Of a stretch of DNA of 64,000 nt, positions 13,107 to 56,265 are shown piece after piece (the first letter of the stretch is position 1; each line of letters begins with the position of its first letter). Made by a program: the position numbers and the translations under genes. The notes under the pieces were generated by a model, which saw nothing but the letters and a program-made list of their open reading frames with translations, made no database searches and had not been told where the DNA came from. Source of the DNA: Thecamonas trahens ATCC 50062. Taxonomy: Eukaryota > Protista > Apusomonadida. The stretch lies in assembly GCF_000142905.1 (NCBI RefSeq), contig NW_013657651.1:62001-126000 (forward strand), given 5' to 3'.

Positions 13107-16100
13107 CTATCCATCGGATGAAAACGAAAACGAGGAGAACTCCGTCGACTCGGGCCGGAAGAGCACAACATCGGGCACTGCGGTCAGCTGTGGCGTACCT
13201 GCGACTGCATCACGGATACCCTTGCTCTTGTCCTTGCTCTTGGCCTTGCTCTTGCTCTTGCTCTTGCTCTTGCCCTTACCCTTGGCCTTGGCCTTGCTCT
13301 TGCCCCTGCCCTTGCTCTTGTGCTTGGCTTTGGCTTTGGCCTTGCTCTTGGCCCGATCACCGCCGCCAGTGCCCGGCATCGCCAGCGATTGCGCAGCCAG
13401 GCGCCGCTCACGCCGCCGTCCGAGCCCATCGCCGTCAACAGCCGCTATTGGCGCAGCCTCATTGTTGCGACCGGTCGACAGCGCCCGTGCTTCGCTGTAT
13501 GGCGCCAGCACTGTCCCGCGCCACATAGCCCGCCCGGCGAGCCAAGCCTCGCGCCGTGTCGCTGCCAACGCCGCAAATCGTTCGCTCTCGTGCCGCACAA
13601 TGCGCGCCCTCATCTTGGCCACCGCCGCCCGTGCACCTTCCGCCCGTGCACCTTCGCCGCTCTTCTCGGCGGCGGCTACCGCCGCTCGCCGCCGCTTGGA
13701 CCGCTTGCTCTCAGCCTTGGCTGCAGCCTTATTTCGCGCCGCGTCGATTGGTCTTAGCGCAGCCGTGAGCCGCACCTCGATCGCCGTCCGCGTCTCGACC
13801 AGCTCAGCAGAGTTGAACCACCGCAGAAACTCGCCGGTGTCGTACAACGGGTCGTACTCATCCATCTCGTCAGGATCCACAGCGAGCACCCCAGGCAGTC
13901 GTGCAAAGTAGTTCTCCACATGCGGATCGCGAATGATCCGCCGCAACACCTTGGCGTTCTCCGCCACAGGCGCAAACACATCGCGCAAAATCTCAAAGAT
14001 CCGCGCCTGCACCCCGGGCAGCTCGGCCGCATGCAGAAACAGCCGGAGAAGGAGGACGAGCCCGCCAGAATCGCGGAATAGCGGCTGCGCCGCAATCGTC
14101 TCAAAGTTGAAATTGACAAAGAACGACGAGAGCTCTAGAGGCGTCAATCGCCCGTCGAGCAAAACACCACCATGGCGTTGTGCACCTGCAACAAGCCCAC
14201 GTTCCGAATCAGCGTCCGCACTTCGGGTGTCGCGCGCCATGTCAGCGCGTGGATCGTGTTGATGATCCGCTCGCACAAGTTGGGCGAAAAGCCAGGCACG
14301 CTCTGCAAGCCCGAGAAGAGCACCACAAGACCCTTGACAAACGACGCGACCTCAAAGTTGCCCACGCCCTCGGCAGACCGCTCCTCGAGAAACCGCAGCA
14401 GCGAGCCGCGCGGATGCGCACCGCGTCCGCCGCCACTTGCAAGGATCGGGTACGCCGCCACAACGTCAAGCAGCGCTTCGCCAACAAGGAGTACAAACTG
14501 AGGCGCGTCCGTCATCCCGAGCAGCTTGCCGAGGAGCACAGGCCGCTTGCTCCCCAGGTCAAAGAGCAGCGTCCGCTGAAGAACAGGGAGAAAGCCAACC
14601 ACAACACGCGGCTCCGCCGCAATCCCGTCGCCGTCTCTACCACACAGCAGCTCCCGGCACCACTCCAGCCACGGCACATCCCACAGCTGCACCAGGTTTG
14701 CCTCGCGCGAGAACAGTCGCTCCAGCCGCGCAAAGATAAATGACGCCACGTCGTCGCCCACCCTCTCGCCGCCCTCGCCCAACACAAGCAGGAGGCTCTG
14801 CACAAACGCGACGTGCCGAACGAGCTCGCCGCGAGACAGCGCGCCCTTGCCTCCGGTGCCGTCAACCATTGCGGCGCGGAACGCCGAAAACCACTTGGCT
14901 GCCCCACGTGAGCCAAACTCGGTCGGTCCGGCCAGCCCGCTCGTCCCGGCCTCGTCGCGCTCCTCACCGCCGTCACCGTCGCCACAGCCATTCTCGTCGC
15001 CATCGTCACTCACATCTCCGGCCTCCTCGCCTAGCATGATCGAGTCAGAGCCTTCGTCACCCAGAGCCTCGAGCCCGGCCCCGCCTGACGCCATCAGCAC
15101 AAACGACGGCGAGAATAGCATCGGCGGTCCGGACCTCCCGCGCTCACGCCCGCTCACGCTCCCGCGCCGCGTCTCGCGCGCGTGAAACTCCGCTCCGTTG
15201 ACAATCAAGCTCTCCAGCGCGCTTACTCCGGGCTTGTCCATCTCGAACCCGCACAACGCCTCGCCCACCAGTCGCGGCAGCGCAAGCGCCTCCACCGCCT
15301 GCAAGCTTGTCTTCGGCCGATACTGCAGGAGCAGCGAGAGCAGCGAGAGGGCTGCCTGTCGCATACGCGCGCTGTGAGAGCCCACAGCCACGGCCACAAA
15401 CTCAAAGAGCCGCCGCCCTAGGCCGAACACCTGCTCCAGCAGCGGTGACACCACCGCAACCTCCTGCACAACCATAAGAAAGAGCTCCACACGCACAGGC
15501 GCCACTTCCTCGCTCGACTCGCGCTCGTCCATCATAAACTCAAACAATGCCTCGAGCTGTCCGCACGAGAGCCAGCCCACCACACTTCGCATCAGCCGCA
15601 CCACAATGTGCGCAAGCTTCGGAAACACAAGTCCGATGCGGAGCATCCGCGGCAGCGCGTGTGGAAGCGCGAGGAGCGCCTCTACGTTGCCCGCTTCCGC
15701 CACTATCACGTCCACCAGGCCGTGCACCACCCGCCGTGGCACGCGTTCACTCCCGCTTCGGCCAAGCACGTCCAGCAGCGTCGCCACATACCCCGCGCGC
15801 AACACCGCGAGTTGCACACCGGCCCCGGTAGAAATCTCAGCTCCCGCAAGCCCGGACACAAGCGGGTACACCAGTGCAAACGGAATGTCGGAGCTCTCCT
15901 CAAACTCGGATCCCGGCAAAAGGTAGCGCACTAGCTCGGCGCCCGCAAGGTCGTCGTGAAGCTGTCGTCCCAGGCTTCCGCCTGCACTTCGCGCCGAGCC
16001 CACCGCCACACACAGCCCGAGAAGCTGGAACGAGGCAAACAGGACCTTGTCGCGTGCCTTGCGCATCTGCACCTCGTCTGGCCCGCGCACAAGCGCCGGA

Positions 16101-19100
16101 AGCACGCCCACCATTCCGCCAAGCACATCGATGCTCGACGCGAGGCTCGGCTCGTCTACCACCGCTTCGGTGCCTCGCACTCCGCGCACGCCAGCCAGCA
16201 GCCTCAACTCTGCCGTCGTGATGGCGCCCGCCCGCTTCGCTGGCGAGCCGAGCCCGCCAGAGCCCGAGCTCTTGCCCGACGGTGAGCCCGCTGCAGATCC
16301 AGGAGAGTGCGCGCTGCTTCCAGCTAGTGACACCGCTTGCGACGCAACCAGCTTGCCGCGCACCATCTCGTGGTCGCCTGCGCCGAGCTCGTACCAGGCC
16401 AGCACCTCGTCGTCGCCGACCGCCCCACCCACCACGTACACGTCCGAGACAGCGCCAGAAAACCCGCCGCCGTCGGTGCCGACCTCGACCCGTGCCGCAC
16501 CTCCGCTTGCCACCTCGCGCGCAACCAGCTCCGCCTCTTCGACCTCGGTTGTTACACTCGCCCCGTTGATGTACACCCGCGTTCGCCCAGCCCCGTTCAC
16601 GCTCACCACCAGAGCATTGAACTGCGAGTTGCCGGCAACAAGCGCGTGAGGCAGCACAACCTGCGCCTCGCCCACCGTCACTCGCACCATATACATCCGG
16701 CCGTCGGCTTTGCTCACAGGCCCAACACAGCCGTCGTTTGTCAGTGTCGAGCCCGACGAGACAGACGCCGAGTCGACCGTCCGCGACTCGGCCATGGCGC
16801 CGCTGCTTCCGCCGCTGGCCGCCCGGTCGCGCGAGCACGACCGCTGCCGTCGGGCCGGGCCGCTCAGCAACGGCACAAAGGCGAGCTCGAGTATCACTTC
16901 GCGATCATTCTGCACGCGAAGCAGCACCATTGCACTCTCGCTTCCGCCGTCAGCGCTGGTCCAAGTGCTCGCTTCGAGCGCGACCCAGCATGAGATCGCC
17001 CACGGTGAGTTAAGGGCCGTAGCCTCGAGCTCGGTGAAAAGCGCGCTGTCGCTGCCAGCTCCGTACGGTCCGCCGGGCGCGGCGCTTCCAAGCAGCACCA
17101 CAGTCCGCGGTCGTGCCGAGTACGCCATTCCAGCAAGGGCATGGAGAATGTCCTCGCGTAACCGGTCGCGCTCGCGCCGCGCAAGCACGAGGCCCAGTTC
17201 GCTTTCGCTGCCCCATAGCCCGTCTCCAAGCCCCGCCAGAGCGTCGAGCGTCTTTTGCAGTTGCTGCGGCCAGATGGCCGTCGCACCAACCAGCCGCGCA
17301 AGGTCAAGATACATGGTCCGAGTCGACGGCAGCAGCTGGCTCGAGGGCGTCAGCGCAAGGTCGAGAAGTGTGGCGTAGCCCGAGGCCCGCGCAAACACAA
17401 TCGCGTTTCCGCGCGACGCCTGCACAAGCGCATGCACCAGTAGCAGCGGCGAGAGCGGATCGAGATCGTCCAGCAGTGGCAGCGCCGCGAGCACAAGGCT
17501 GGCCCCGGCCACAGACAGGAAGCGCACCCCGCGCAGCGCTTCTGTCGCCAGCGGTGAGTGGAACGCCGACGACGCTGTCAGCTGCGCTGCAGGCCGCGAC
17601 GCCACAACGTGGCCCGGCTCTACCAGCCCGCCACGGTAGACAACCCGCCGCCCGCGAATCCGCGATCCCGAGCTGCTCCTGCGCTGCGACGCCGACTCGG
17701 ACGACCGCCGTGACGATGACGACGCCCGCGACCGGATCCGCGATCGCGCAGACCGCGACGACGCCCGCGATGCCGATGGCGCTGTTGACGTGTTTGAGAC
17801 TGTTGTCGAGATCGACGAGACCGAGCCTGTCGATGAGACCGACAACATCGCCCCGCCTTCGCCACCCACCGTCTTGGATGCGGCAACAGAGAGCGCAATG
17901 AGGTCTTCCGTCGAGGTGATGGTCCGGAACGAGGCCACCGAGCTGGCCCGCGCATTGCCCAGCGACGGCGATGGTAGCAGCAGCATGTCACCTTGGTACG
18001 CTGCATGGTGCTGCGGGCCATGCGAAGTCGACATCGACGCAATCGAGAGCGACGACGCAGACTTGTGAATCGGCTTGGCAAACGCCGGTCCCGAGCTCGA
18101 GCCCGAGCCATGCACAACCGGTTGCGCCTCTCGCACCAGATCGTGTGCCGTCAGCAAAGCCCGCGCCGAGCTGAGCGCCAGCGGCAACGTCGGTTCGCTG
18201 CGATCAACCTCAGCCATGACCGCGGCCAGCTTGGGCGCGCGGACCGAGTCGCCCAACGACGACGAGACCGTGGTCGTGGTCGATGGCAGCAGATGCAGCT
18301 CGCTGAGAACGGCCGTCACCGACGGGCGCACGGCCATGTCCACCAGGCGGTAGAAGAGAGGCAACGGGAGCTGCGTCCGCATCCCGCGCTCGCCCAGGCC
18401 TACCAGGACCCGTGTCAGCTGCTCCATCTCGCTTTGGCTTGCCCGTCCAGCCCACAGCCGGCAGAGCGTGTCAACGACGGCGAGCGCAATCGTCGGTGGC
18501 GCTCCGGGTGCCTCGAGCGTCCGTGGAAGAGAGAGCAGGACCATAAGCGTCTCGCGTGACGCCGCCATCGCTCGTCCAGCGTCTGCCGACGTTGACACCA
18601 GCGCGTTGATTCCGTGCAGGAGCGCGGCAGCGACGCCTGCGCTCAGCCCAGGTGCAGAGAGCAGAGCCGTGTAGACTTTTGCGGCGTCCGGTGTAGCAGA
18701 CGGCAGTGTGATGAGGGTATTGAGAAGCCAGATAAGGCCGTGAATCAGTTCGGTAGGCGGTGGCGACGCCGATCGCGATCGCGGCACCAGCAGCGTTTGC
18801 AGGTGTGGCTGGACCATGGCGAGTGAGAGCGGCTCTGACGGGAGCCGTGCGAGAAGTACCAGCACCTTGATGACGCCCAGGCCGAGGTCAGCCGGTGGCA
18901 GGGAGCGTGGACCCGAGGTGGCTGACACCACAAACGGTTCCCGGGTGAGCAGCGCGCACACGTTGGTTGCCAGCGCTACGTACGACTCGGAGGCTACTGA
19001 CGGATGGGCCAGATGCAGGCTCAGCGCCGATGCCAACGAGTCCAGCAGCTCGGCCACCAACTCGGGCGCCAGCGGCGGCTGCGAGAGAAGAAGCTTGGAG

Positions 19101-20887
19101 AACTCAAAGAGAACCACACACGAGTGGTTGGTGAGAAGGAGCGAGCTGTAGTCGAGGAGAGCGAGGAGGCAAGGCCCGAGCCGCCCCACCGCATCGTCAT
19201 CAAGATGGACAAGGGCGAGGACCAGTCGCCCGATGCCGCCCGAGAGGAGGAGCATAAGTGCGTTGCACGGGTTTGCCACTAGCACGTCGAGTAAGCATTG
19301 CAGTGCGCTGACGACGCAGCTTGTTGCTGCGGGCCGCCGCACGCCGCTCTGCACCCGCACACCAACCTCGACCAACACCTCGAGCGCCCACAAGTTGCCT
19401 ACCAGCCTTGAGTTGCGGCCCTGGAGGACGAGGACAAAGAGTGCGTCAAAGGCGCGAGCGGCAAGAGCTGGTGGTGCCGCTGCCAGAGCCTCGGACGCCA
19501 GCACGCTCTCCATGGCCACTGCTGCTCCGGCTGAGGCCACCATGCGGCTTGCAGCCCGAGACGTGACTCCGAGCGCAGCAAGAAGGACAAGGCCGGCGGT
19601 CCGGGTCGCTACCGACGCGGCCTGTTCGACAGTCGCCACAATGGCCGCAACGTGGGCCATGAGCGGGTGCATGTCCGCGGCAGCCGCCGCCGATGGCGGC
19701 GCCCGCGCCTGCTGTCGCTGCAGCTCGTCAAACTCGAGCTGCGTGTCCGCGAGCTGTGCGGCGGTCGGGATGTGCTTGGGAAGAACGCGGCGAGAGTCGG
19801 TGCCGCTCACGTCATCGTCGATCGAGCCCAGCGACGGCGTCGGCCGCAGCGTCGCCGCAGTCTTGGACTCGAACATAGACGACATCATCGATGCCGCGTC
19901 AGTGAAGAGGCTTGCCACGTTGGTGAGGAGCGAGGGCTTGACCTCGGTCGCCGCGGGACCGGCTGGCGGCAGGCTGCCAGGTTGAGGTCCAAACCCGACA
20001 AGCGCCAGCGTAAGGACTCGGAGCGCAGCAGCAGCGACGTCATCAGCGACATCGTCTGCCCGTGCCCCTGCGTCGCCGGTCCCGCCTCCGGTGCTGGCGT
20101 TGCTCCCGTTGGTCGACGCACCGAGCTGAACCAGCCCCGCGAGCACATCCGGTGTGCCGCAGACCAGCGCATCGACTGCCGGTACGCCAATGACATGCGC
20201 CAGCATGCCCATGATTTTGCGAGCGGCATACAGTGAGGAATGTGCGGCCGCCAGTCCCGCCCTGGCCAACAGCAGGCCTAGATGTGGGACAGTGGTGGCA
20301 AGGCGCTTTCCGTCCGAGCTCGTGATCAGTAGATCCAAGACAGCAAAGGCCGAGCGAGCGTCCGGACGAGAAGCATGTGGATCATTCAAGATCCAGGCGA
20401 GCATACAAGCAGTCTCTTCCGGTCGCTGGAGCAGGGCAGCTGGCGAAGGGCGATCTGGCGACGAGGCCGGTGAGGCAAAGGCTAAGTCCGAGTACGCCGA
20501 GTGAAAGGCATTGGCAAAGGCGGTGAGAGCATCAGTAGCTTCATCACTTGGCAGCGGTGGCTCTATTCTCTCTGCCATTGCCCCCATTCTTGTCATGGTC
20601 TCGATCTTGCTCCCATGGCTCTTCTCCATGCCTAACTCTTCCTCCCTCCCGGCCAGTGCCTCCATGCCCACCTCCACCATTGCCAAAGAGGCATATCTCT
20701 GCCATAGCCGGTCCAAGCTCGTCCGCTCCCCACCTGGTGCAAGGGCAAGTAACGACCGCATCGGAGAAGGGGGAACGTTGTGCTGGAAGGGGTGGAAAGA
20801 AGGGAGGTGTGACCTGTCGTCTTCGTGTGGCCTGGCCTGCCCGTCTCCGGTGAGCTCTCTGGCGCGACCTGGTCCCTCTCTCCCCAT
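13107..20887 (-). CDS. Very large (about 2590 aa) helical-repeat plus ConA/LamG-like protein resembling the N-terminal part of neurobeachin/BEACH proteins; one frameshift at about 14162
   Basis: 2247-aa ORF joins the frame of 13107-14276 if one T is added (VVFLLDGRLTPLELSSFF). Motifs WAISCWV...FSGAVSDVYVV...EVLAWYELG and SSIDVLGGMVGVLP. Lys-rich tail. Alternative start at 20761. Confidence 0.7.
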
Positions 20888-21566: not shown

Positions 21567-24500
21567 ATGGACCGTACAGGAGGGGACCAATGGAAAGGTC
21601 GCGATTCGGCACCGGGCAATGGCAGTGACAGTGACAACGTCCGCGCATCCACAAGCGCACCTATGACAAGACCGATGGCGAACAATGGTAATCAAGGACG
21701 TGAATGGTCGACATCGAGTGCGCCGCAGTTTCAGGAGCAGAACGCGCAAGCTCCGGGCGCATCGGCAAAGTACATCGCGCCGGCCAAGCTGCTGGCACCG
21801 CCACCGTCTGTGCTGGTGTGGCAGGCTGTGGCTGATAATGATGTTGAGGCTGTGCGGTGGTGGATCGAGTCGACTCGTGTCGCTCCAGGATCGCCGGATA
21901 CCCATGGAAATACCGCTGTTCACGTTGCTGCGCATCACGGCCGTGTTGACATCCTCAGGATCCTGCTCGAGTCTGGCGGTTCGCCCGACTTTCCGGATGC
22001 CGCCGGAAACACCCCGCTTCATCTTGCGGCACACTTTAATCATCCGGCTGCGGTGGCGCTGCTGCTGGAGACCCACGCTGTACCGACGCTGCGGAACTCG
22101 TTTGGCGCCACGCCGCTCGACGATACGCCCGACGATGCCGAGCAAGTCCACACCCTGCTGTTGGCGGCGATGGAAAACGAGATTGTGACGCACTACCTGG
22201 AAGATGTTGACAACAGGCGGAAGCGATACGAATTTGTTCGGCTGACACTGGTCAACACCGTGCTCACGGTGGCGCAAGGTGCCATCGGCACTGCAGGCAA
22301 AGTTCGCATCGTCACCTACAAGTCGATCGATCGGGCGTACGCTGCACTCGACAAGCGCCTCGAGGGTCTGATGGCCCGTGGCTGGTCTGAGGCCCGCATG
22401 GGTGCCCGCCTCTACCGCCACACCGTCAACAAGGCCAAGGTCGCCCGCTCAGACAGGCACATTGCCGCCTACCAGCGGCAGCGCGCTGCGATCGAAGCTG
22501 GCATGCTGATTGTCGGCGAGCCGCCGCTGCCCACGTCACCGCCCCAGCAGCAGCAGCAACAACAACAACAGCAGCAGCAGCAGCAGCAGCAGCTTCCCTC
22601 CGCGACCACTTTGCCGCCGCCCAATGACAACGGGAGCAGCGAGGTTGGGGGCGTCGACTGGGCGCCGTTTGAGTCGGAGACCTCGGGCTCTGTCCCGTTC
22701 TTCTCCGAGGCCTTTGTCGAGAGCCTTGCGGCTTCACCGCAGTACATGGCGCGGGCACGCAAGGTTGTTGCCTCGGCCGCCATGCACCCGCGCTACCGGC
22801 GCGGGCCGATGCTCTCGGCGCTATGCACTGGCTCGCGCAACGAGACGTACAGCGTCCGGGTCCGGTTTGACCCCAACGAGGTCGACCCTACCGGCCGCCT
22901 TGTGGCCATTACTCATGCCAACTGCAACTGTATGTCTGCATCGACCGACATGCCCGGCCGGTGCAAGCACATCCTCGCCCTGCTCCTGCACTGGCTCGAC
23001 GATCCGTCCGAGACCTCGTTTGTGGTGCCGGCGTACCAGGCGTTGCCAACCAAGTTCTTTGAGCGTCTCTTTGGCGTTTTCCTCAGCAATGACGATGCCA
23101 CCACCGCCGCAGCTGCACAGGTCTGCTCGGTCTGGCGCACCATGGTGGCCCGGTTTGGGACCGGTCGCTGGCACTCGGCCGTCTTTACGCCTCCGCCCGA
23201 GGGAGGCAGAGGTGGGCTGATCATCGCCCGCGCCGCGTCCGCCGTCTCATTCTCGGGCCTCCAGCCGTACACCATCGAGACCTGGTTGAGGCCGCGGACT
23301 AAGTCGAGCTCCGGCACGTTGGTGGCCAAGGTTGACCGCGGCGTCGGCGCCGAGTATGCGCTCGAGCTCCACGACTCGGTCCTCCGCGTCTTTCGCAACA
23401 TCGAACCGTACGTGCTCGACGGGACGACCACTCTCGCTGTGAACCGCTGGTACCACGTGGCGGTCACCTTTAACCAGATGTGGGTCCGGCTCTACCTCAA
23501 CGGCGAGGAGGAGGCTGCCATGTCGTGGGGCCCACACAACGCCGCCACCGGCATCCCGCTCTGCATTGGCGGCGTGCTCGACGCCGGCGTCCCGGCCTCT
23601 TTCTTTGACGGCGACGTCCAGGAAGTCCGCATCTGGGCCGCCTCCCTCCCGCAAGCCCGCATCAAGCAGTCGATGTTTGCCTCGCCTGGCAGCGTCGTCG
23701 CCGCCGCCGTCGCCGGTGGGAGCTCGGCACCGCGGCTCGTCTCCCGCATCCGGGTCTCGGCCGCCGCCGACGCGGTGGTCGACGATGCCAACGGTGTGTC
23801 GGACCTCGAGCTCATGGGGGCCGATGAGTGCGTCGCTATTGCTCGCGCCGGCTTCCATGCCTTCTTTGGCCTGGCGCAGCGGGCCGCCGCGATGGCAGAG
23901 CGAGCCCGCCGGGCCGAAGCCGGCAAGAGCAAGGGTGCTGACGACGCCGGTGCGTCGTCGTCCGGCAGCCACAAGGCCGTAACCACCGGCGACGGTGACG
24001 CCGACGTCGTCCTCCACAACGCCATGCGCGAGCCGTGGTACATCTTCCCGGACGAGGTGACCTTCGGCGAGCTGCTGGGCTCGGGCGCGTTTGGCGCGGT
24101 GCACGCGGGCGAGTGGCGAGCTGCGCCAGTGGCCATCAAGAAACTCCTTGACGCCGAGATGGGCGGAAAGGAGCGACTGGAGACGTTCCGTCGCGAGATC
24201 TCGATTGTGGCACGGCTTCGCGGCTCGCCGTACGTAGTCCAGTTTCTCGGCGCGTGCATGCATCCGACTGCGCACTTTATTGTCACCGAGCTAATGTCGA
24301 ACAAGAGCGTCGAGTATTGGATCCGCAGCCCAGACAAGGTGCTGTCGGTGCCGGAGCGGGTGCGGATGGGCCTCGACGCTGCGCGCGGCATGCTCCACAT
24401 CCATGCCGAGGGGCTCATCCACGGCGACCTCGCGCTCCGCAACTTGCTCGTCGACGACACCTTCCGGGTCAAGGTGACCGACTTTGGCCTCTCGCGCGTC

Positions 24501-24842
24501 CGCACCGGCTCTCTCAACGAGGTTTCGCAGGCCATGGGCACGCCAGTCACCATGGCGCCCGAGCTCATCCAGGGCCACGCCATCTCGACCAAGGTCGACG
24601 TCTACTCCTTCGGCGTCGTGCTTTGGCAGCTCTACACTCGCGACGACCCGTTTCCGGGCCTTACTCCCATGCAGGTGGCCTGGCGGGTGGTCATGCAGGG
24701 CGAGCGGCCGGAAATCCCGGCCCACACTCCAAGCTCGCTGACACAGCTCATCGAGCGCTGCTGGGCTGCGTCGGCCGACGACCGGCCCGACTTTACCGTG
24801 ATTGTTCGCGAGCTCTCGCTCATCGCGGTCCAGCCGCTGTAG
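21567..24842 (+). CDS. Multidomain TKL protein kinase: ankyrin repeats - WGR-like - polyQ - SWIM Zn finger - F-box-like - LamG - kinase
   Basis: GNTAVHVAA and GNTPLHLAA; CNC...CKHILALL; WYHVAVTF...LYLNG...FDGDVQEVRIW; GSGAFG, VAIKKL, HGDLALRN, DFG, MAPE, DVYSFG. Confidence 0.92.
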   Translation: MDRTGGDQWKGRDSAPGNGSDSDNVRASTSAPMTRPMANNGNQGREWSTSSAPQFQEQNAQAPGASAKYIAPAKLLAPPPSVLVWQAVADNDVEAVRWWIESTRVAPGSPDTHGNTAVHVAAHHGRVDILRILLESGGSPDFPDAAGNTPLHLAAHFNHPAAVALLLETHAVPTLRNSFGATPLDDTPDDAEQVHTLLLAAMENEIVTHYLEDVDNRRKRYEFVRLTLVNTVLTVAQGAIGTAGKVRIVTYKSIDRAYAALDKRLEGLMARGWSEARMGARLYRHTVNKAKVARSDRHIAAYQRQRAAIEAGMLIVGEPPLPTSPPQQQQQQQQQQQQQQQQLPSATTLPPPNDNGSSEVGGVDWAPFESETSGSVPFFSEAFVESLAASPQYMARARKVVASAAMHPRYRRGPMLSALCTGSRNETYSVRVRFDPNEVDPTGRLVAITHANCNCMSASTDMPGRCKHILALLLHWLDDPSETSFVVPAYQALPTKFFERLFGVFLSNDDATTAAAAQVCSVWRTMVARFGTGRWHSAVFTPPPEGGRGGLIIARAASAVSFSGLQPYTIETWLRPRTKSSSGTLVAKVDRGVGAEYALELHDSVLRVFRNIEPYVLDGTTTLAVNRWYHVAVTFNQMWVRLYLNGEEEAAMSWGPHNAATGIPLCIGGVLDAGVPASFFDGDVQEVRIWAASLPQARIKQSMFASPGSVVAAAVAGGSSAPRLVSRIRVSAAADAVVDDANGVSDLELMGADECVAIARAGFHAFFGLAQRAAAMAERARRAEAGKSKGADDAGASSSGSHKAVTTGDGDADVVLHNAMREPWYIFPDEVTFGELLGSGAFGAVHAGEWRAAPVAIKKLLDAEMGGKERLETFRREISIVARLRGSPYVVQFLGACMHPTAHFIVTELMSNKSVEYWIRSPDKVLSVPERVRMGLDAARGMLHIHAEGLIHGDLALRNLLVDDTFRVKVTDFGLSRVRTGSLNEVSQAMGTPVTMAPELIQGHAISTKVDVYSFGVVLWQLYTRDDPFPGLTPMQVAWRVVMQGERPEIPAHTPSSLTQLIERCWAASADDRPDFTVIVRELSLIAVQPL

Positions 24843-24860: not shown

Positions 24861-26590
24861 TCAAGCAAACTTAGTCTGTTCACACACGTGGTTGTACCGC
24901 TTGGCATGGCCGACCGACCTGCTCTGGGTTCGGCACGCCGAGCCCCAGTGGCAGTTTGGCCGTGAGGTAGCGTTGGCCGGCAGCGCGCTGCGCGGCAGCG
25001 ACATGAGGTAGTCCGGAATGAGGTCGCGGAACACGTTTGAGGCGCATCCGTGGCATGTGGCGGTGGCCTCGGTGATGCCGACCGCAGGTCCAGCTCCGTC
25101 TGGCGAGTATGTGTAGCTGCCGGCGGAGAGCCCGCCGAGCACCGCCTGCCACAGCCCATCGACTGAGAGGCTGGCAGACGCCATGTACTCGTTGAGAAAC
25201 TTGATCTCGACGAGGTTGTCCCAGAGAACGTGGGCCGGGAGCCGCGGAAATTCCCATGAGCCGAGTGCGCGCAGCGCACCCTGGCCAAGCAGTGAACGGC
25301 AGCCCCAGTAGAGATCGCAGAACGGGGTGAGGCAGAGCGCACACTGGATGGCCGGGCCGTCGTACCCAGCCTCGTCGGTGCGCTTCGGGAGGAGCTCGAG
25401 GCAGACCGAGCACGTGAGGTGCGTCGGATCAGATCCACTGCACTGATGACCACTCGATCCTGGAGCGCGGCACTCGCGGCACTGAGTGTTGGAGACCCGA
25501 GGTGGCGCGGCCGACGACGCGGTCGAGCTGGTGACGCCGGCCGCCGCCGGCACCGGCGGTGCGCCAAAGGCAAACGTGAGTCCACCCCATGCGTGGCCCG
25601 AAGGATGTGCGCTGCTTCCAGGCAACGCCTCGCCTTCGTACTCGTCGTACTCGTCGTACTCGTCGTGGCCGTGGTGGAGATGGAGCGCAGCGGCTGCCGC
25701 TGTCCGCGAGCGGTACGGCGAGGTCGGCGGCGAGCGACGCGAGACGAGACTCTTTGCGGCTCGGTCTAGCGCGGCCAGCTCATCGGCGTTGCGCGCCTGG
25801 TCGGGGTGGTCCTTGAGAAAGGCCTCGACAAGGTTGCGGATAGTGTGGTTGTCGGCGGCGTCCGAGACGGTGGCCCGGCACATGGGGCACTCGTGCGAGT
25901 TCTTTGCCCACTGGGCGTAGCAGCCGGCGCAAAAGTTATGCATGCACGGGACCAACGCCATGGCCTTGTGCATAATCTCTTGGCAGATGGAGCAGGTGAG
26001 CAGCTCGGCGTATGGTGTGGCATCTGCGACGGCGTTCCCTCCGCCGCCGCCGCCGCCGCCGCCGCCTCCTCAGCGGCGGCCCCTGCGAGCGACTTTGCCC
26101 GCTTGGCCGGCGGCGGCTCGGTGGCTGCAAGTTGCGGCGAGGGCGAGCTCCCGTCGTCTGACACTGTTGACGCCATCTCCAAGGTAGCGTCCAGATCGTC
26201 ATGATCGGAAGAGACCCTGGGGCGCTTCTTGGAGACAAGAACGACCGACCAAACAGCAGCAGGACAAGCTGAGGGCGAGTCATTTGTGGCAACTTGCGGA
26301 GCGACGAGAGAAATGACATCGCCCGAGTTGAGAGCATGCGATGCGCCATGAGCGAGACGGAGATCATTGACAAAGGTTCCATTGGTGGAGGCATCCGTGA
26401 CACTGGCAGACGAGCCATCGTCGCTGACAGCAATGGTCACATGACGACCAGAGACCCGCCCGTCAGGAATCCTAGCTCCATTGGGGAGGTTCTTAGACCT
26501 TCCAAACACCATAGAACATCCAGCTTCGATCCATACTGCTGTCCTCTCTCCCTCCTCGCCATCCCTTCGCTCCAGTCGCACTCCTGCCAT
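24861..26590 (-). CDS. CHFR: CHFR checkpoint E3 ubiquitin ligase (FHA - RING - Cys-rich/PBZ); one frameshift at about 26038
   Basis: FHA (FGR...VSGRH...DASTNGTFVN), RING (LTCSICQEIMHKAMALVPCMHNFCAGC...CPMCR), and C-terminal NCHWGSACRTQ...HAKRYNHVCEQTKF. Confidence 0.92.
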
Positions 26591-27316: not shown

Positions 27317-28078
27317 CTACATCAAAAGCCGCTCGAGGTTGGGTGCAACGACACGGACAAGCGAGATCGACCAGTCGATTCGGGTGAGGCCGAGATCAAG
27401 AACGCGGAGGCGCGGGAGGCGCGGGACGACCTCGCGCCCATTCGAACATCGCGCAATCAACATCTTCGGGTTGTTGATCGCCCGCCATACGTTGCAGAGT
27501 GAGAGCCACTCGAGAGAGGACTGCAGAATTGAGTTGAAGAGCAGTGCGCGGACTCCACGATGGGTGACTCTCGTGCAGAGGCCGAGATCGAGCACCCGCA
27601 GCGACGGCATCGCATCCAGGTCGGCTAGAGCGACAAGCGCGTGGTCGGTGACCGCGATGCACCCACGGATCCAGAGCGCATGCAACCGTGGCAGTTGCTC
27701 CACCGCGTGGATCACTACATCGTCGGTCACTGCCCTTCGGCAGTACGAGAGGTCGAGGCCGGTCAGCCGCGTCCAGCCCAAATCTAGGCCGCGCGCCAAG
27801 CCCGACCTCGTCAGCGCGCGGCACTTGACCATCCGCAGCCGATCCAGCGCCGCGCCCAACGCCTGACCTGCCGCCACCAGCTGCTCATTTGTCACATCTC
27901 GTGCCATCACTAGCGACTTGTCCTGCCACACACTCCAGTCGTGTGCGATCCGCCGCAACCGCCGGCATGTCGCGCCCAGCGCAAGCAGCGTCGACGCCGG
28001 AAGCATACTCATCACGTACGCTAAGACCTCATCCGGCAAGTCCAGCACGCCTTTCCTCGCCGAACAAGCACCAGCCAT
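27317..28078 (-). CDS. F-box/leucine-rich repeat protein (FBXL/AMN1-type LRR)
   Basis: F-box LDLPDEVLAYVMSMLP...TCRRLRRIAHDWSVW; LRRs LTGLDLSYC..VTD, LWIRGCIAVTD and LRVLDLGLCTRVT. The 3' end is uncertain. Confidence 0.85.
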   Translation of the reverse strand: MAGACSARKGVLDLPDEVLAYVMSMLPASTLLALGATCRRLRRIAHDWSVWQDKSLVMARDVTNEQLVAAGQALGAALDRLRMVKCRALTRSGLARGLDLGWTRLTGLDLSYCRRAVTDDVVIHAVEQLPRLHALWIRGCIAVTDHALVALADLDAMPSLRVLDLGLCTRVTHRGVRALLFNSILQSSLEWLSLCNVWRAINNPKMLIARCSNGREVVPRLPRLRVLDLGLTRIDWSISLVRVVAPNLERLLM

Positions 28079-54898: not shown

Positions 54899-56265
54899 TC
54901 AGGTGGGAGGGTCAGGAGAAAGCGCTGCTGCCAGCCGCGCAGCGAGGGTAGAGTGGCCAGAGGCGGATGCGCGGCGGATGCGGTATGGATGACGTCGGAT
55001 GTGGTTGAGGAATGGGCGAGGAGGAGATCGACCGACATAGAGTCGCCGTTTCTGGCAGCGGCGACTATCGCCGACGTCGGCTGGGTCATGCTGGCATCGG
55101 CTTGTGGATGGGCAAGGAGCGCGGCGAGAAAGTCGGTCTGGCGCGCCATGACTGCATCGAGAAGAGCGATGTTCGGATCGGTGAGTGGATGGGCGAGGAG
55201 AGCGTTGGTCACAGCCATGCTACCAGTGCGACAGGCTACGCGGAGCGCTTCACACTCGGTCGGATCGACCCGCGGATCGGCCAAGAGCAGCGCGACAGTC
55301 TCGACGGCACCGGCGGCGACAGCAATTCGCAGCGTCCGGTTGCGCCGCGAGCTCGGGTCGACTTGCGGATGGAGGATGAGCTCGTTGACAATGTCAAAGT
55401 GGCGATTGGTGGCAGCCCAGTACAGCGCGATGTTGTTTCTGGCCGACGGATCGGTCCGTGGATCGTCACAGAGCATGCGGACAATGTCGAGGTGGCCGTT
55501 CTCTGCGGCGTGGCTGACAGCTGCAGAGTCCTTGGCGGCCGGATCGACCCGCCCACAGGCCAGCAGCCCCGCTACTGCCCGATCCTTTCCAAGCAGAGCA
55601 CATCTCCGTAGCAGCACGCCCTGATCGATGCCCAGTGCAAGCTCGCCGTCATCATGGAGGAGGAGCCACTCGACGAGCGCCTCGTTGGCCACCATTGCCA
55701 CCGCCCGCACCATCGCAGCCCGCCCGACGCCATCCGAGACATGAAAGACAGCTTTGGCAACGTCCGGCAAGCCGCTCAGCACCGCACTCGCCGCCATCGG
55801 CCAGCACGGAACACCATCGCCAGTGTGAGTGAGTGCGCCTACCCGAGCCAGCGCCTCGACTAGGGCCAGCCACTCCGAGTCGCCCAGCGGCGGCGGGTCG
55901 AGATCAAACAGGCCAGCGAGCGGAGATGGCACCTGGGCCCAAAGCATGTTGCGGTCGTCCGGGCGAGTGACGGCGAGCGCCATGGCGGCTGCACGCCAGC
56001 GGGCGTGGTGGATGCAAGCGGCGAGACCTGTCCGGGCGGCGGCCTTGTCTGCGGCAAAGGCGTCGGCGAGAAGAAAACGATGCATGCGGGAGGAGGTGCA
56101 GGCGAGGGCAAGGTAGGCCTGCGCGGGGAGGTACACTGCTATGCCAAGCACGAGCTCCGGTGGAAGTGCCCCGAGGCCACGATCGGTCTTGCTCGCCTCG
56201 GATCCCGCCAGCCGCCCGCCCGACATGGAGACGTGTACCAACGCTTTGCGTGCCAAGCTTAGCAT
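54899..56265 (-). CDS. F-box plus ankyrin-repeat protein
   Basis: F-box LGALPPELVLGIAVYL...LACTSSRM; ankyrin repeats DPAAKDSAAVSHAAENGHLDIVRML and DPSARNNIALYWAA. The stop at 54899 is inferred via a frameshift at about 54947. Confidence 0.75.

What the first reader, a model, noticed from the sequence alone, without database searches (positions are those of the whole stretch)
21567..24842. Unusual six-module kinase: Ank - WGR - SWIM - F-box - LamG - TKL
Seen in one uninterrupted ORF: ankyrin repeats (about 21820-22170); a WGR-like domain HYLEDVD...YEFVRLTL...VAQGAIGTAGKVR...ARGW (about 22190-22390); polyQ; SWIM YSVRV...CNC...CKHILALL (about 22850-22990); F-box-like LPTKFFERLF...AQVCSVWR (about 23040-23140); an intracellular LamG domain; and a kinase. 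Known: WGR binds nucleic acid or DNA breaks in PARPs, WGR and SWIM co-occur in bacterial proteins, and F-box recruits SCF. Inference: a single-chain nucleic-acid or damage sensor coupling phosphorylation to ubiquitylation (stress or innate-immune signalling). I do not recognise this architecture from described proteins.
Basis: partly seen in the sequence, partly recalled or inferred. Interest (0 to 1): 0.8.

Follow-up and report, generated by a model that had tools for sequence, protein, structure and literature searches.

The report
Kinase fused to an F-box receptor
A single-copy gene of the protist Thecamonas trahens really does join six modules (ankyrin, WGR, SWIM zinc finger, F-box, LamG and an active TKL kinase) in one protein, so it probably couples phosphorylation to SCF-type ubiquitin ligation, but nothing shows that it senses DNA damage.

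Summary
The 1091-aa ORF at 21567-24842 (+) is real. It is the Thecamonas trahens gene annotated only as "TKL protein kinase"; the database model is identical except for one in-frame 105-nt poly-Q "intron".

- **Ank, LamG_3, kinase:** clear Pfam matches.
- **WGR:** borderline by Pfam (24.0 bits cut out, 18.7 in context). Its fold matches WGR domains, but the W and R residues are not kept.
- **SWIM:** weak by Pfam. It is homologous to bacterial SWIM proteins, has invariant CxC...CxH, and matches ZSWIM8's SWIM domain (Z 12.4).
- **F-box:** missed by Pfam. A profile of 30 of the genome's own F-boxes matches it at 94.9% (P 4e-8; shuffles at most 2.8%). A predicted complex with Thecamonas Skp1 scores 0.80 against 0.02 for the best control.

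One collinear ortholog (39% identity) exists on an independent assembly, which rules out a chimera. No other protein with this SWIM–F-box stretch turned up among 1.84 billion representatives.

Best reading: an SCF substrate-receptor module (SWIM–F-box–LamG) fused to an active non-RD TKL kinase. The closest functional analogues are MAP3K1 and ZSWIM8. DNA-damage or nucleic-acid sensing is unsupported. This is a new domain architecture built from known parts, and its function is untested.

The parts
21567..24842 (+). Whole ORF, 1091 aa, about 118 kDa, pI 6.35. Thecamonas trahens gene annotated as 'TKL protein kinase'.
   Evidence: Single copy in the genome.
21822..22151 (+). Ankyrin repeats (aa 86-195; Pfam core 86-174).
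   Evidence: Ank_2 E 1.9e-14, Ank_4 E 1.9e-15.
22191..22397 (+). Divergent WGR domain (aa 209-277). Basic (pI 9.8). The WGR motif reads QGA.
   Evidence: Pfam 18.7 bits, 24.0 bits as a cut piece, 24.2 bits in the genome scan. hhalign P 1e-4. AF2 core pLDDT 72-93. Foldseek top hits are 2ra8 and the PARP1/2/3 WGR domains. Motif, charge.
22535..22639 (+). Poly-Q / low-complexity linker. It is removed as an in-frame 105-nt GT..AG intron in the database model. Whether it is spliced is unresolved.
22695..23042 (+). Extended SWIM zinc-finger domain (aa 377-492). Zinc ligands C453, C455, C466, H468 lie at 22923-22970.
   Evidence: phmmer hits to bacterial SWIM proteins down to E 1.6e-8. Ligands invariant in 33 sequences. 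AF2 pLDDT above 90. VIA Z 12.4, rmsd 2.2 A over 102 residues to ZSWIM8 residues 113-223.
23034..23153 (+). F-box (aa 490-529; begins with the LP dipeptide at aa 492-493 and ends just past the VC..WR..V motif).
   Evidence: Pfam F-box-like is the only hit, 15.2 bits, E 0.018. hhalign against 30 own-genome F-boxes gives 94.9%, P 4.3e-8, with negative controls. Predicted Skp1 complex 0.80 against 0.02 for the best control, interface aa 489-524.
23244..23663 (+). LamG_3 / concanavalin-A-like beta-sandwich (aa 560-699). Cytosolic.
   Evidence: E 2.8e-20. No TM segment or signal peptide.
24060..24815 (+). TKL-type protein kinase domain (aa 832-1083). GSGAFG, VAIK, HGD (non-RD), DFG and APE are all present.
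   Evidence: E 4e-58. Motifs. Nearest natural solved kinases are CTR1, ZAK/MLT and TNNI3K.

Best explanation
This is a genuine, conserved, cytosolic multidomain signalling protein of the apusomonad Thecamonas trahens. An SCF substrate-receptor-like module is fused to a catalytically competent non-RD TKL kinase. The module is a SWIM domain, then directly an F-box, then directly a LamG beta-sandwich. Ankyrin repeats and a divergent WGR domain sit at the N-terminus. Proposed mechanism (inferred): the F-box docks the protein on Skp1 and so on a cullin-RING core. The SWIM domain stiffens and organises that docking region, as it does in ZSWIM8. LamG, and probably Ank, hold a target protein. The kinase in the same chain phosphorylates either that target or the receptor itself, so phosphorylation and ubiquitylation of one target are coupled in one polypeptide, as in MAP3K1/MEKK1 (SWIM + RING/PHD E3 + kinase). 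The WGR domain is most likely a regulatory or ligand-binding module whose ligand is unknown. Shown here: the six domains, their order, their conservation in an ortholog, intact kinase motifs, and the presence of Skp1, cullins and a large F-box family in the genome. Inferred: Skp1 binding (model only), the substrate-receptor role, and kinase-ubiquitin coupling.
For: The ORF and its domains. A collinear ortholog, P0027, has 39% identity over aa 362-1087 and 47% over the WGR, with an Ank ORF directly upstream on its contig. SWIM: 32 bacterial SWIM proteins hit at E up to 1e-3, CxC..CxH is invariant, and ZSWIM8's SWIM domain matches at Z 12.4 with the next hit at 3.2. F-box: hhalign against a profile of 30 own-genome F-boxes gives 94.9%, P 4.3e-8. 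Each ortholog alone gives 82.5% and 93.7%. Forty column shuffles reach at most 2.8% and the bacterial post-SWIM profile 0.3%. Homology to bacterial SWIM proteins stops exactly where the F-box begins. Skp1 complex: score 0.80, best of 3 controls 0.02. That mark was reached by 51 of 78 solved complexes and 2 of 108 mismatched pairs; on eukaryotes by 39 of 65 solved pairs with no like older complex and 2 of 126 unrelated pairs. The runs agree in at least 76% of contacts and the partner's pLDDT is at least 71. The interface uses the C-terminal helices of Skp1 (99-162) and aa 489-524. Skp1, at least 4 cullin genes and at least 101 F-box-like matches are present in the genome. Kinase motifs are intact. 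In ZSWIM8 the SWIM domain is the 'central organizer' of a cullin-RING receptor superdomain (PMC13083262). The MEKK1 SWIM domain is a substrate receptor for c-Jun ubiquitylation, and its PHD domain is an E3 (cited in PMC4356348).
Against: No experiment exists. The Pfam F-box-like score is below cut-off (15.2 against 24.3 bits), and the genome-wide scan did not list this site at E <= 0.01. The ortholog has LS instead of LP at the start of the box. The complex predictor may score high from memory of solved Skp1-F-box complexes, so a pass shows likeness rather than binding. Some F-box proteins bind Skp1 without forming an SCF ligase. The WGR model was built with true WGR domains in its alignment, so that fold match is partly circular. 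Only two sequences carry the architecture, so conservation evidence is thin.
Confidence: 0.55

Rival explanations
1. The F-box serves the kinase rather than a substrate. Skp1/SCF binding controls the kinase's own stability or localisation (auto-ubiquitylation and turnover), or Skp1 is bound in a non-SCF complex. LamG, Ank and WGR are then ordinary targeting domains of a TKL kinase.
For: It rests on the same F-box and Skp1 evidence. Ank plus TKL kinase is a common pairing; TNNI3K is among the nearest solved kinases. From general knowledge, F-box proteins are often themselves SCF substrates and some act outside SCF.
Against: The order F-box followed directly by a beta-sandwich is the standard layout of a substrate receptor. 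Nothing tested here distinguishes the two readings.
Confidence: 0.2
2. One reading: WGR, with SWIM, senses nucleic acid, DNA breaks or poly(ADP-ribose), and this switches on the kinase and SCF recruitment in a damage, stress or innate-immune pathway.
For: The WGR fold matches PARP1/2/3 WGR domains at rmsd 1.4-2.1 A over 62-68 residues. The WGR core is basic in both orthologs, pI 9.8 and 10.2. Thecamonas uses WGR in DNA-repair contexts such as PARPs, BRCT-WGR-Macro and SAP-WGR. ZSWIM8 has weak sequence-independent RNA affinity. The non-RD catalytic loop HGD/HQD is conserved. A CHFR-like RING gene lies next door.
Against: The Trp and Arg of the WGR motif, which contact DNA and neighbouring domains in PARP1 (general knowledge), are not kept: QGA here, TSR in the ortholog. 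There is no PARP regulatory or catalytic domain, zinc-finger DNA-binding domain, BRCT or SAP domain in the protein. The best structural hit is a bacterial WGR protein of unknown function (2ra8). Gene adjacency means little in a eukaryote.
Confidence: 0.12
3. The helices after the SWIM finger are not a working F-box. They are a structural or dimerising extension of the SWIM domain, in the position of the D-domain of ZSWIM8, so the protein is simply a multidomain TKL kinase.
For: Pfam is below cut-off. In ZSWIM8 the segment after SWIM is a dimerising D-domain. Bacterial homologues also have helices after SWIM. AF2 pLDDT of this segment is only about 74-77.
Against: Profile homology to bacterial proteins ends at aa 493. 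The bacterial post-SWIM profile does not match F-boxes (0.3%), whereas this segment does (94.9%, P 4e-8), and so does each ortholog alone. The Skp1 model uses the canonical surface.
Confidence: 0.12
4. Artefact: an assembly chimera, a fused gene model or a decaying pseudogene.
For: The architecture is very rare. GC3 is lower in the N-terminal and Ank part (0.59-0.63) than in the rest (0.75-0.89).
Against: The frame is open for 1091 codons. The same module order occurs on an independent contig from another sample at 39% identity, which implies purifying selection. All catalytic and zinc-binding residues are intact.
Confidence: 0.02

Closest known systems
MAP3K1 / MEKK1 (animals)
   Same: One polypeptide joins a SWIM zinc finger, a ubiquitin-ligase element and a protein kinase. 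The MEKK1 SWIM domain acts as a substrate receptor for c-Jun ubiquitylation (PMC4356348). So MEKK1 works the way I propose this protein does.
   Different: MEKK1 carries its own RING/PHD E3 domain and a STE-group kinase. This protein has an F-box (adaptor to SCF), a TKL kinase, and in addition WGR, Ank and LamG. No RING or PHD domain was found. It is an analogue, not an ortholog.
ZSWIM8 (cullin-RING substrate receptor for target-directed miRNA degradation)
   Same: It is the only strong structural match to the SWIM domain: Z 12.4, rmsd 2.2 A over 102 residues, 22% identity. In ZSWIM8 the SWIM domain is packed against the adaptor-binding box and organises the E3 superdomain, with a substrate-binding domain downstream (PMC13083262).
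   Different: ZSWIM8 uses a BC/CUL3-box N-terminal to SWIM and binds Elongin B/C-CUL3. It has a D-domain and HEAT repeats and no kinase. Here an F-box follows SWIM. By sequence, the SWIM domain here is nearer to bacterial SWIM proteins.
Canonical F-box proteins with a C-terminal beta-sandwich (for example FBXO45 with F-box-SPRY, FBXO2 with F-box-FBA; from general knowledge)
   Same: An F-box followed directly by a concanavalin-A-like or beta-sandwich substrate-binding domain. Thecamonas has at least 101 F-box-like matches plus Skp1 and cullins.
   Different: None of these carries a kinase, SWIM or WGR. Eight long F-box ORFs sampled from this genome had WD40, Ank or nothing, never a kinase.
Ankyrin-repeat TKL kinases (TNNI3K, ILK) and Raf-like CTR1 / ZAK
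   Same: The kinase domain is closest to CTR1 (E 7e-49), ZAK/MLT and TNNI3K. N-terminal Ank repeats plus a TKL kinase is a known pairing.
   Different: Those proteins lack WGR, SWIM, F-box and LamG. Here the catalytic loop is non-RD (HGD).
Bacterial ~590-aa 'SWIM zinc finger family proteins' and the E. coli yeh cluster
   Same: The SWIM region, aa 375-493, is detectably homologous to these bacterial proteins (E 1.6e-8 to 1e-3). One has a VWA gene upstream. In E. coli K-12, WGR genes (yehF; yehH/I) and the SWIM gene yehQ lie in one cluster with a MoxR ATPase and a VWA protein.
   Different: No pairwise similarity to YehQ or YehF themselves. No WGR gene lies beside the three closest bacterial homologues examined. 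The bacterial proteins lack F-box, LamG and kinase.
PARP1-3 WGR domain
   Same: The predicted fold superposes at rmsd 1.4-2.1 A over 62-68 residues, and the Pfam WGR model matches.
   Different: The W and R of the motif are not conserved. There is no PARP regulatory or catalytic domain. A DNA-break sensing role cannot be transferred.

Membership tests
WGR domain (PF05406) | Score at or above Pfam's gathering cut-off (22 bits) | tested here: inconclusive
   18.7 bits in the whole protein, 24.0 bits as a cut piece, 24.2 bits in the six-frame scan. The ortholog scores 16.7 bits at the homologous place.
WGR domain (PF05406) | Antiparallel beta-sheet plus helix fold, as in the PARP WGR domain | tested here: met
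   AF2 core pLDDT 72-93. Foldseek top hits are 2ra8 (E 2e-4) and the PARP1/2/3 WGR domains. Caveat: true WGR domains were in the input alignment.
WGR domain (PF05406) | Conserved Trp-Gly-Arg motif | tested here: not met
   QGA here and TSR in the ortholog, against WGR/YGR/FGK in other Thecamonas WGR domains. The following IG.AG is kept.
SWIM zinc finger (PF04434) | CxCx(n)CxH zinc-binding signature | tested here: met
   C453, C455, C466 and H468 are invariant in all 33 aligned sequences.
SWIM zinc finger (PF04434) | Pfam gathering cut-off (19.6 bits) | tested here: not met
   9.9 bits and 12.9 bits as a cut piece. However, its phmmer relatives pass the cut-off at the aligned position.
SWIM zinc finger (PF04434) | Fold of a solved SWIM domain | tested here: met
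   ZSWIM8 9rwz_N: Z 12.4, rmsd 2.2 A, 102 residues aligned; the next entry scores Z 3.2.
F-box (PF00646 / PF12937) | Pfam gathering cut-off (24.3 bits for F-box-like) | tested here: not met
   15.2 bits, E 0.018, the only family hit for the piece. Not reported in the whole-protein scan.
F-box (PF00646 / PF12937) | Profile similarity over the whole three-helix core to bona fide F-boxes | tested here: met
   hhalign 94.9%, P 4.3e-8, aa 490-529 against profile positions 5-41. Shuffles reach at most 2.8%, the bacterial control 0.3%, and each ortholog alone 82.5% and 93.7%.
F-box (PF00646 / PF12937) | Binds Skp1 through the C-terminal helices of Skp1 | tested here: inconclusive
   Prediction only: score 0.80, best of 3 controls 0.02. 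The mark was reached by 51 of 78 solved complexes and 2 of 108 mismatched pairs. Runs agree in at least 76% of contacts and partner pLDDT is at least 71. The interface is Skp1 99-162. The pass may reflect memory of solved complexes. Physical binding cannot be tested here.
LamG_3 / concanavalin-A-like (PF13385) | Pfam gathering cut-off (27.6 bits) | tested here: met
   73.4 bits, E 2.8e-20, profile positions 12-150 of 151. The ortholog scores 71.8 bits.
Eukaryotic protein kinase, TKL group | Kinase profile match plus the catalytic motifs (G-loop, VAIK Lys, HxD Asp, DFG, APE) | tested here: met
   PK_Tyr_Ser-Thr 197 bits. GSGAFG, VAIK, HGD, DFG and APE are present. The nearest natural solved kinases are the TKL members CTR1, ZAK and TNNI3K. 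NCBI names it 'TKL protein kinase'.
Eukaryotic protein kinase, TKL group | Arg of the HRD motif (RD kinase) | tested here: not met
   HGD here and HQD in the ortholog, so this is a non-RD kinase.
PARP-type DNA-damage sensor | WGR coupled to PARP regulatory and catalytic domains and DNA-binding zinc fingers | tested here: not met
   No PARP, PARP_reg, zf-PARP, BRCT or SAP hit in this protein, whereas the genome's true PARPs show them.
MAP3K1/MEKK1 | RING/PHD E3 domain and a STE-group kinase beside SWIM | tested here: not met
   No RING or PHD hit and the kinase is TKL-like. The resemblance is functional only.
ZSWIM8-type CRL receptor | BC/CUL3-box before SWIM and a D-domain after it | not tested
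   The structural alignment covers only the SWIM domain (ZSWIM8 113-223). The segment after SWIM matches F-boxes instead.

The most novel reading that the evidence does not exclude
A self-contained 'write the degron and read it' device. A bacterial-type WGR-SWIM sensing unit gates an F-box receptor whose own kinase creates the phospho-mark on the target held by LamG or Ank. One protein would then perform signal detection, phosphorylation and SCF recruitment. That would be an apusomonad-specific analogue of MEKK1 assembled independently, and possibly a cytosolic non-RD-kinase surveillance receptor.
Probability: 0.15. Interest if true: 0.75.

Novelty: new variant of a known kind. Interest (0 to 1): 0.5.

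Why it matters
Kinase-E3 fusions are rare; MAP3K1 is the textbook case. An independent fusion of a kinase with an SCF receptor module would show that coupling phosphorylation to ubiquitylation in one chain arose more than once. It sits in a lineage close to the root of Opisthokonta and so bears on the ancestry of animal signalling. It also gives a second natural context, after ZSWIM8, in which a SWIM domain sits against a cullin-adaptor box, which supports a general structural role for SWIM in CRL receptors. In practical terms, three of the six domains are invisible to routine annotation, where the gene is called only 'TKL protein kinase'.

Tried and rejected
- **PDB sequence search of aa 195-538:** returned only poly-Q noise.
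- **ESM Atlas:** no usable hit.
- **Word-based homology search with the window protein:** found only itself plus Ank-only and LamG-only proteins.
- **Word-based homology search with P0027:** found only P0027 itself. It even missed the 39%-identical partner, so those blanks mean little.
- **Own-genome paralogue searches:** none found for aa 195-538 or for LamG plus linker.
- **Pairwise comparison with E. coli YehQ (SWIM) and YehF (WGR):** no significant similarity, so I do not call the module 'Yeh-like'.
- **Neighbourhoods of three bacterial SWIM homologues:** one VWA neighbour and no WGR, so a ready-made bacterial WGR-SWIM cassette as the source is not shown.
- **Post-SWIM helices inherited from bacteria:** rejected by hhalign and by Pfam controls on three bacterial pieces.
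- **Recurrent F-box-kinase theme in the genome:** eight long F-box ORFs were sampled and none had a kinase.
- **Literature:** searches for WGR+SWIM, the Thecamonas kinome, the SRA run of the ortholog and F-box-kinase fusions found nothing on this protein.
- **Spliced model:** They were searched and folded apart, by reference (aa 195-323 and aa 359-545).


Full report
**What and where.** The window is Thecamonas trahens ATCC 50062, at G000:C29:62001-126000. The ORF at 21567-24842 (+) is open for 1091 codons. The public model, 'TKL protein kinase' (P0001, 1056 aa), is identical except that it removes 105 in-frame bases. These are 22535-22639, with GT..AG ends, encoding the poly-Q linker aa 324-358. 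Whether that segment is spliced cannot be decided here, and it does not touch any domain. Everything was searched and folded piece by piece, by reference.

**Strong domains.** Pfam finds Ank repeats (aa 86-174), LamG_3 (aa 560-699, E 3e-20) and a Tyr/Ser-Thr-type kinase domain (aa 832-1083, E 4e-58). The kinase has GSGAFG, VAIK, HGD, DFG and APE, so it should be active. The Arg of HRD is missing here (HGD) and in the ortholog (HQD), which makes it a conserved non-RD kinase. The nearest natural solved kinases are CTR1, ZAK/MLT and TNNI3K, all TKL members. There is no hydrophobic segment typical of a signal peptide or membrane helix; the highest 19-residue Kyte-Doolittle mean is 1.45.

**WGR.**
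- Pfam gives 18.7 bits (E 0.002) in the whole protein, 24.0 bits (E 4e-5, above the cut-off of 22) for the cut piece, and 24.2 bits in the genome scan.
- The ortholog hits the same model at the homologous position with 16.7 bits.
- A profile of the two orthologs against seven other Thecamonas WGR domains gives hhalign P 1e-4, but only 56% probability.
- An AF2 model has a confident core (pLDDT 72-93) with four strands and a helix. Its best Foldseek matches are almost all WGR domains: bacterial 2ra8 at E 2e-4, then PARP1/2/3 at rmsd 1.4-2.1 A over 62-68 residues. The input alignment contained true WGR domains, so this test is partly circular.
- The name-giving motif is not conserved: QGA here and TSR in the ortholog, against WGR/YGR/FGK elsewhere in the genome.

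I accept a divergent WGR fold. I do not accept transfer of the PARP DNA-break function.

**SWIM.** Pfam is weak (9.9-12.9 bits). An exhaustive phmmer search of 1.84 billion representatives with aa 359-545 returned 34 hits:
- the query's own public gene model, P0001;
- one eukaryote-type ortholog, P0027;
- 31 proteins, many about 580-640 aa and the rest shorter. Those I scanned carry Pfam SWIM at the aligned place, and those with a name are bacterial: Myxococcota, Deltaproteobacteria, Armatimonadota, Abditibacteriaceae;
- one repeat protein, P0037, which I disregarded.

C453, C455, C466 and H468 are invariant across 33 aligned sequences. The AF2 model is confident over the domain, with pLDDT above 90. 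It matches the SWIM domain of ZSWIM8 at Z 12.4, rmsd 2.2 A over 102 residues, with the next entry at Z 3.2.

**F-box.** Pfam did not report it in the whole protein. For the cut piece the only hit is F-box-like, at 15.2 bits and E 0.018, below the cut-off. I made three further tests.
1. Profile homology to the bacterial SWIM proteins stops at aa 493, exactly where the putative box starts. Post-SWIM pieces of three bacterial homologues give no F-box hit.
2. I built a profile from 30 bona fide F-box-like domains of this same genome. It aligns to aa 490-529 over its whole core with 94.9% probability and P 4.3e-8. Each ortholog alone gives 82.5% and 93.7%. Forty column shuffles reach at most 2.8%, and the bacterial post-SWIM profile gives 0.3%.
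3. I predicted a complex of aa 478-545 with Thecamonas Skp1.
   - The score was 0.80, against 0.02 for the best of 3 controls.
   - That mark was reached by 51 of 78 solved complexes and 2 of 108 mismatched pairs. On eukaryotes it was reached by 39 of 65 solved pairs with no like older complex and 2 of 126 unrelated pairs.
   - The runs agree in at least 76% of contacts and the partner's pLDDT is at least 71.
   - The interface is the C-terminal helices of Skp1 (99-162) and aa 489-524.

A pass of this kind shows likeness to known Skp1-F-box complexes, not binding. The genome has Skp1, at least four cullin genes and at least 101 F-box-like matches.

**Not a chimera, and rare.** P0027 (905 aa) comes from a 4.3-kb contig of run SRR30952585. 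It is collinear with this protein: 47% identity over the WGR and 39% over aa 362-1087, covering SWIM, F-box, LamG, linker and kinase. An Ank-repeat ORF overlaps its start, and its modelled N-terminus looks like mistranslated low-complexity sequence. The ortholog therefore most likely has all six modules. Among the 1.84 billion representatives no other protein matches the SWIM-plus-F-box stretch as a unit. The genome has no paralogue. Eight other long F-box ORFs sampled from the genome carry WD40, Ank or nothing, never a kinase.

**Mechanism.** SWIM, then directly an F-box, then directly a beta-sandwich is the layout of a cullin-RING substrate receptor. [quoted passage not shown] In MEKK1 the SWIM domain is a substrate receptor, and the same chain carries an E3 domain and a kinase (references in PMC4356348). 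I therefore propose an SCF receptor fused to its own kinase, with Ank and LamG for target binding and WGR as a regulatory module of unknown ligand. Only the domain anatomy is shown; Skp1 binding and the coupling are inferred.

In E. coli K-12 the WGR genes yehF and yehH/I and the SWIM gene yehQ lie in one cluster with a MoxR ATPase and a VWA protein, so the association exists. This protein shows no pairwise similarity to YehQ or YehF. The bacterial SWIM proteins closest to it have no WGR neighbour in three contigs, though one has a VWA neighbour. The SWIM domain is closer in sequence to bacterial than to eukaryotic SWIM proteins. That is compatible with lateral origin, but no tree was built.

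**Verdict.** This is a new domain architecture built from known parts: an annotated gene whose WGR, SWIM and F-box modules escape routine annotation. Interest is moderate. It would be a credible second, independent kinase-plus-ubiquitin-ligase fusion in a lineage near the base of Obazoa, but it has only two known members and no functional data.

Noticed in passing
window 24864-25973 (-): A RING finger plus zf-CRD (CHFR-type cysteine-rich domain, E 5e-34) ORF lies tail-to-tail with the kinase gene. Its stop is only about 19 bases from the kinase stop codon. No FHA domain is present in this ORF.
   Followed up: partly
window 27920-28045 (-) and 56068-56172 (-): Two further F-box-like matches in the same window (46.0 and 24.8 bits in the genome scan). 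The first belongs to the neighbouring gene that another reader called F-box/LRR.
   Followed up: no
window 14144-20887 (-): A 2247-aa ORF just upstream on the opposite strand has no Pfam family at E <= 0.001.
   Followed up: no
L008:940-1881 (-), L003:736-2484 (+), L004:784-1887 (+), L009:670-1833 (-): Thecamonas uses WGR in several non-PARP contexts: WGR + SUKH/SMI1_KNR4 (a bacterial-looking pairing), BRCT-BRCT-WGR-Macro, triple SAP + WGR, and a WGR-only ORF.
   Followed up: partly
window 21567-22151 against 22152-24839: Third-position GC is clearly lower in the N-terminal and ankyrin part (0.59-0.63) than in the rest of the ORF (0.75-0.89). Unexplained.
   Followed up: no
P0027 (contig of SRR30952585): The ortholog's gene model begins with a CVCVCVCAC-type low-complexity stretch and overlaps an upstream Ank ORF. 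It probably contains an unrecognised intron or frameshift, so the true protein is longer.
   Followed up: partly
L053:2379-7184 (-): An ARMT1-like damage-control phosphatase domain, an F-box-like match and Ank repeats lie in one 1602-aa open frame of the same genome. This is another unusual F-box fusion.
   Followed up: no
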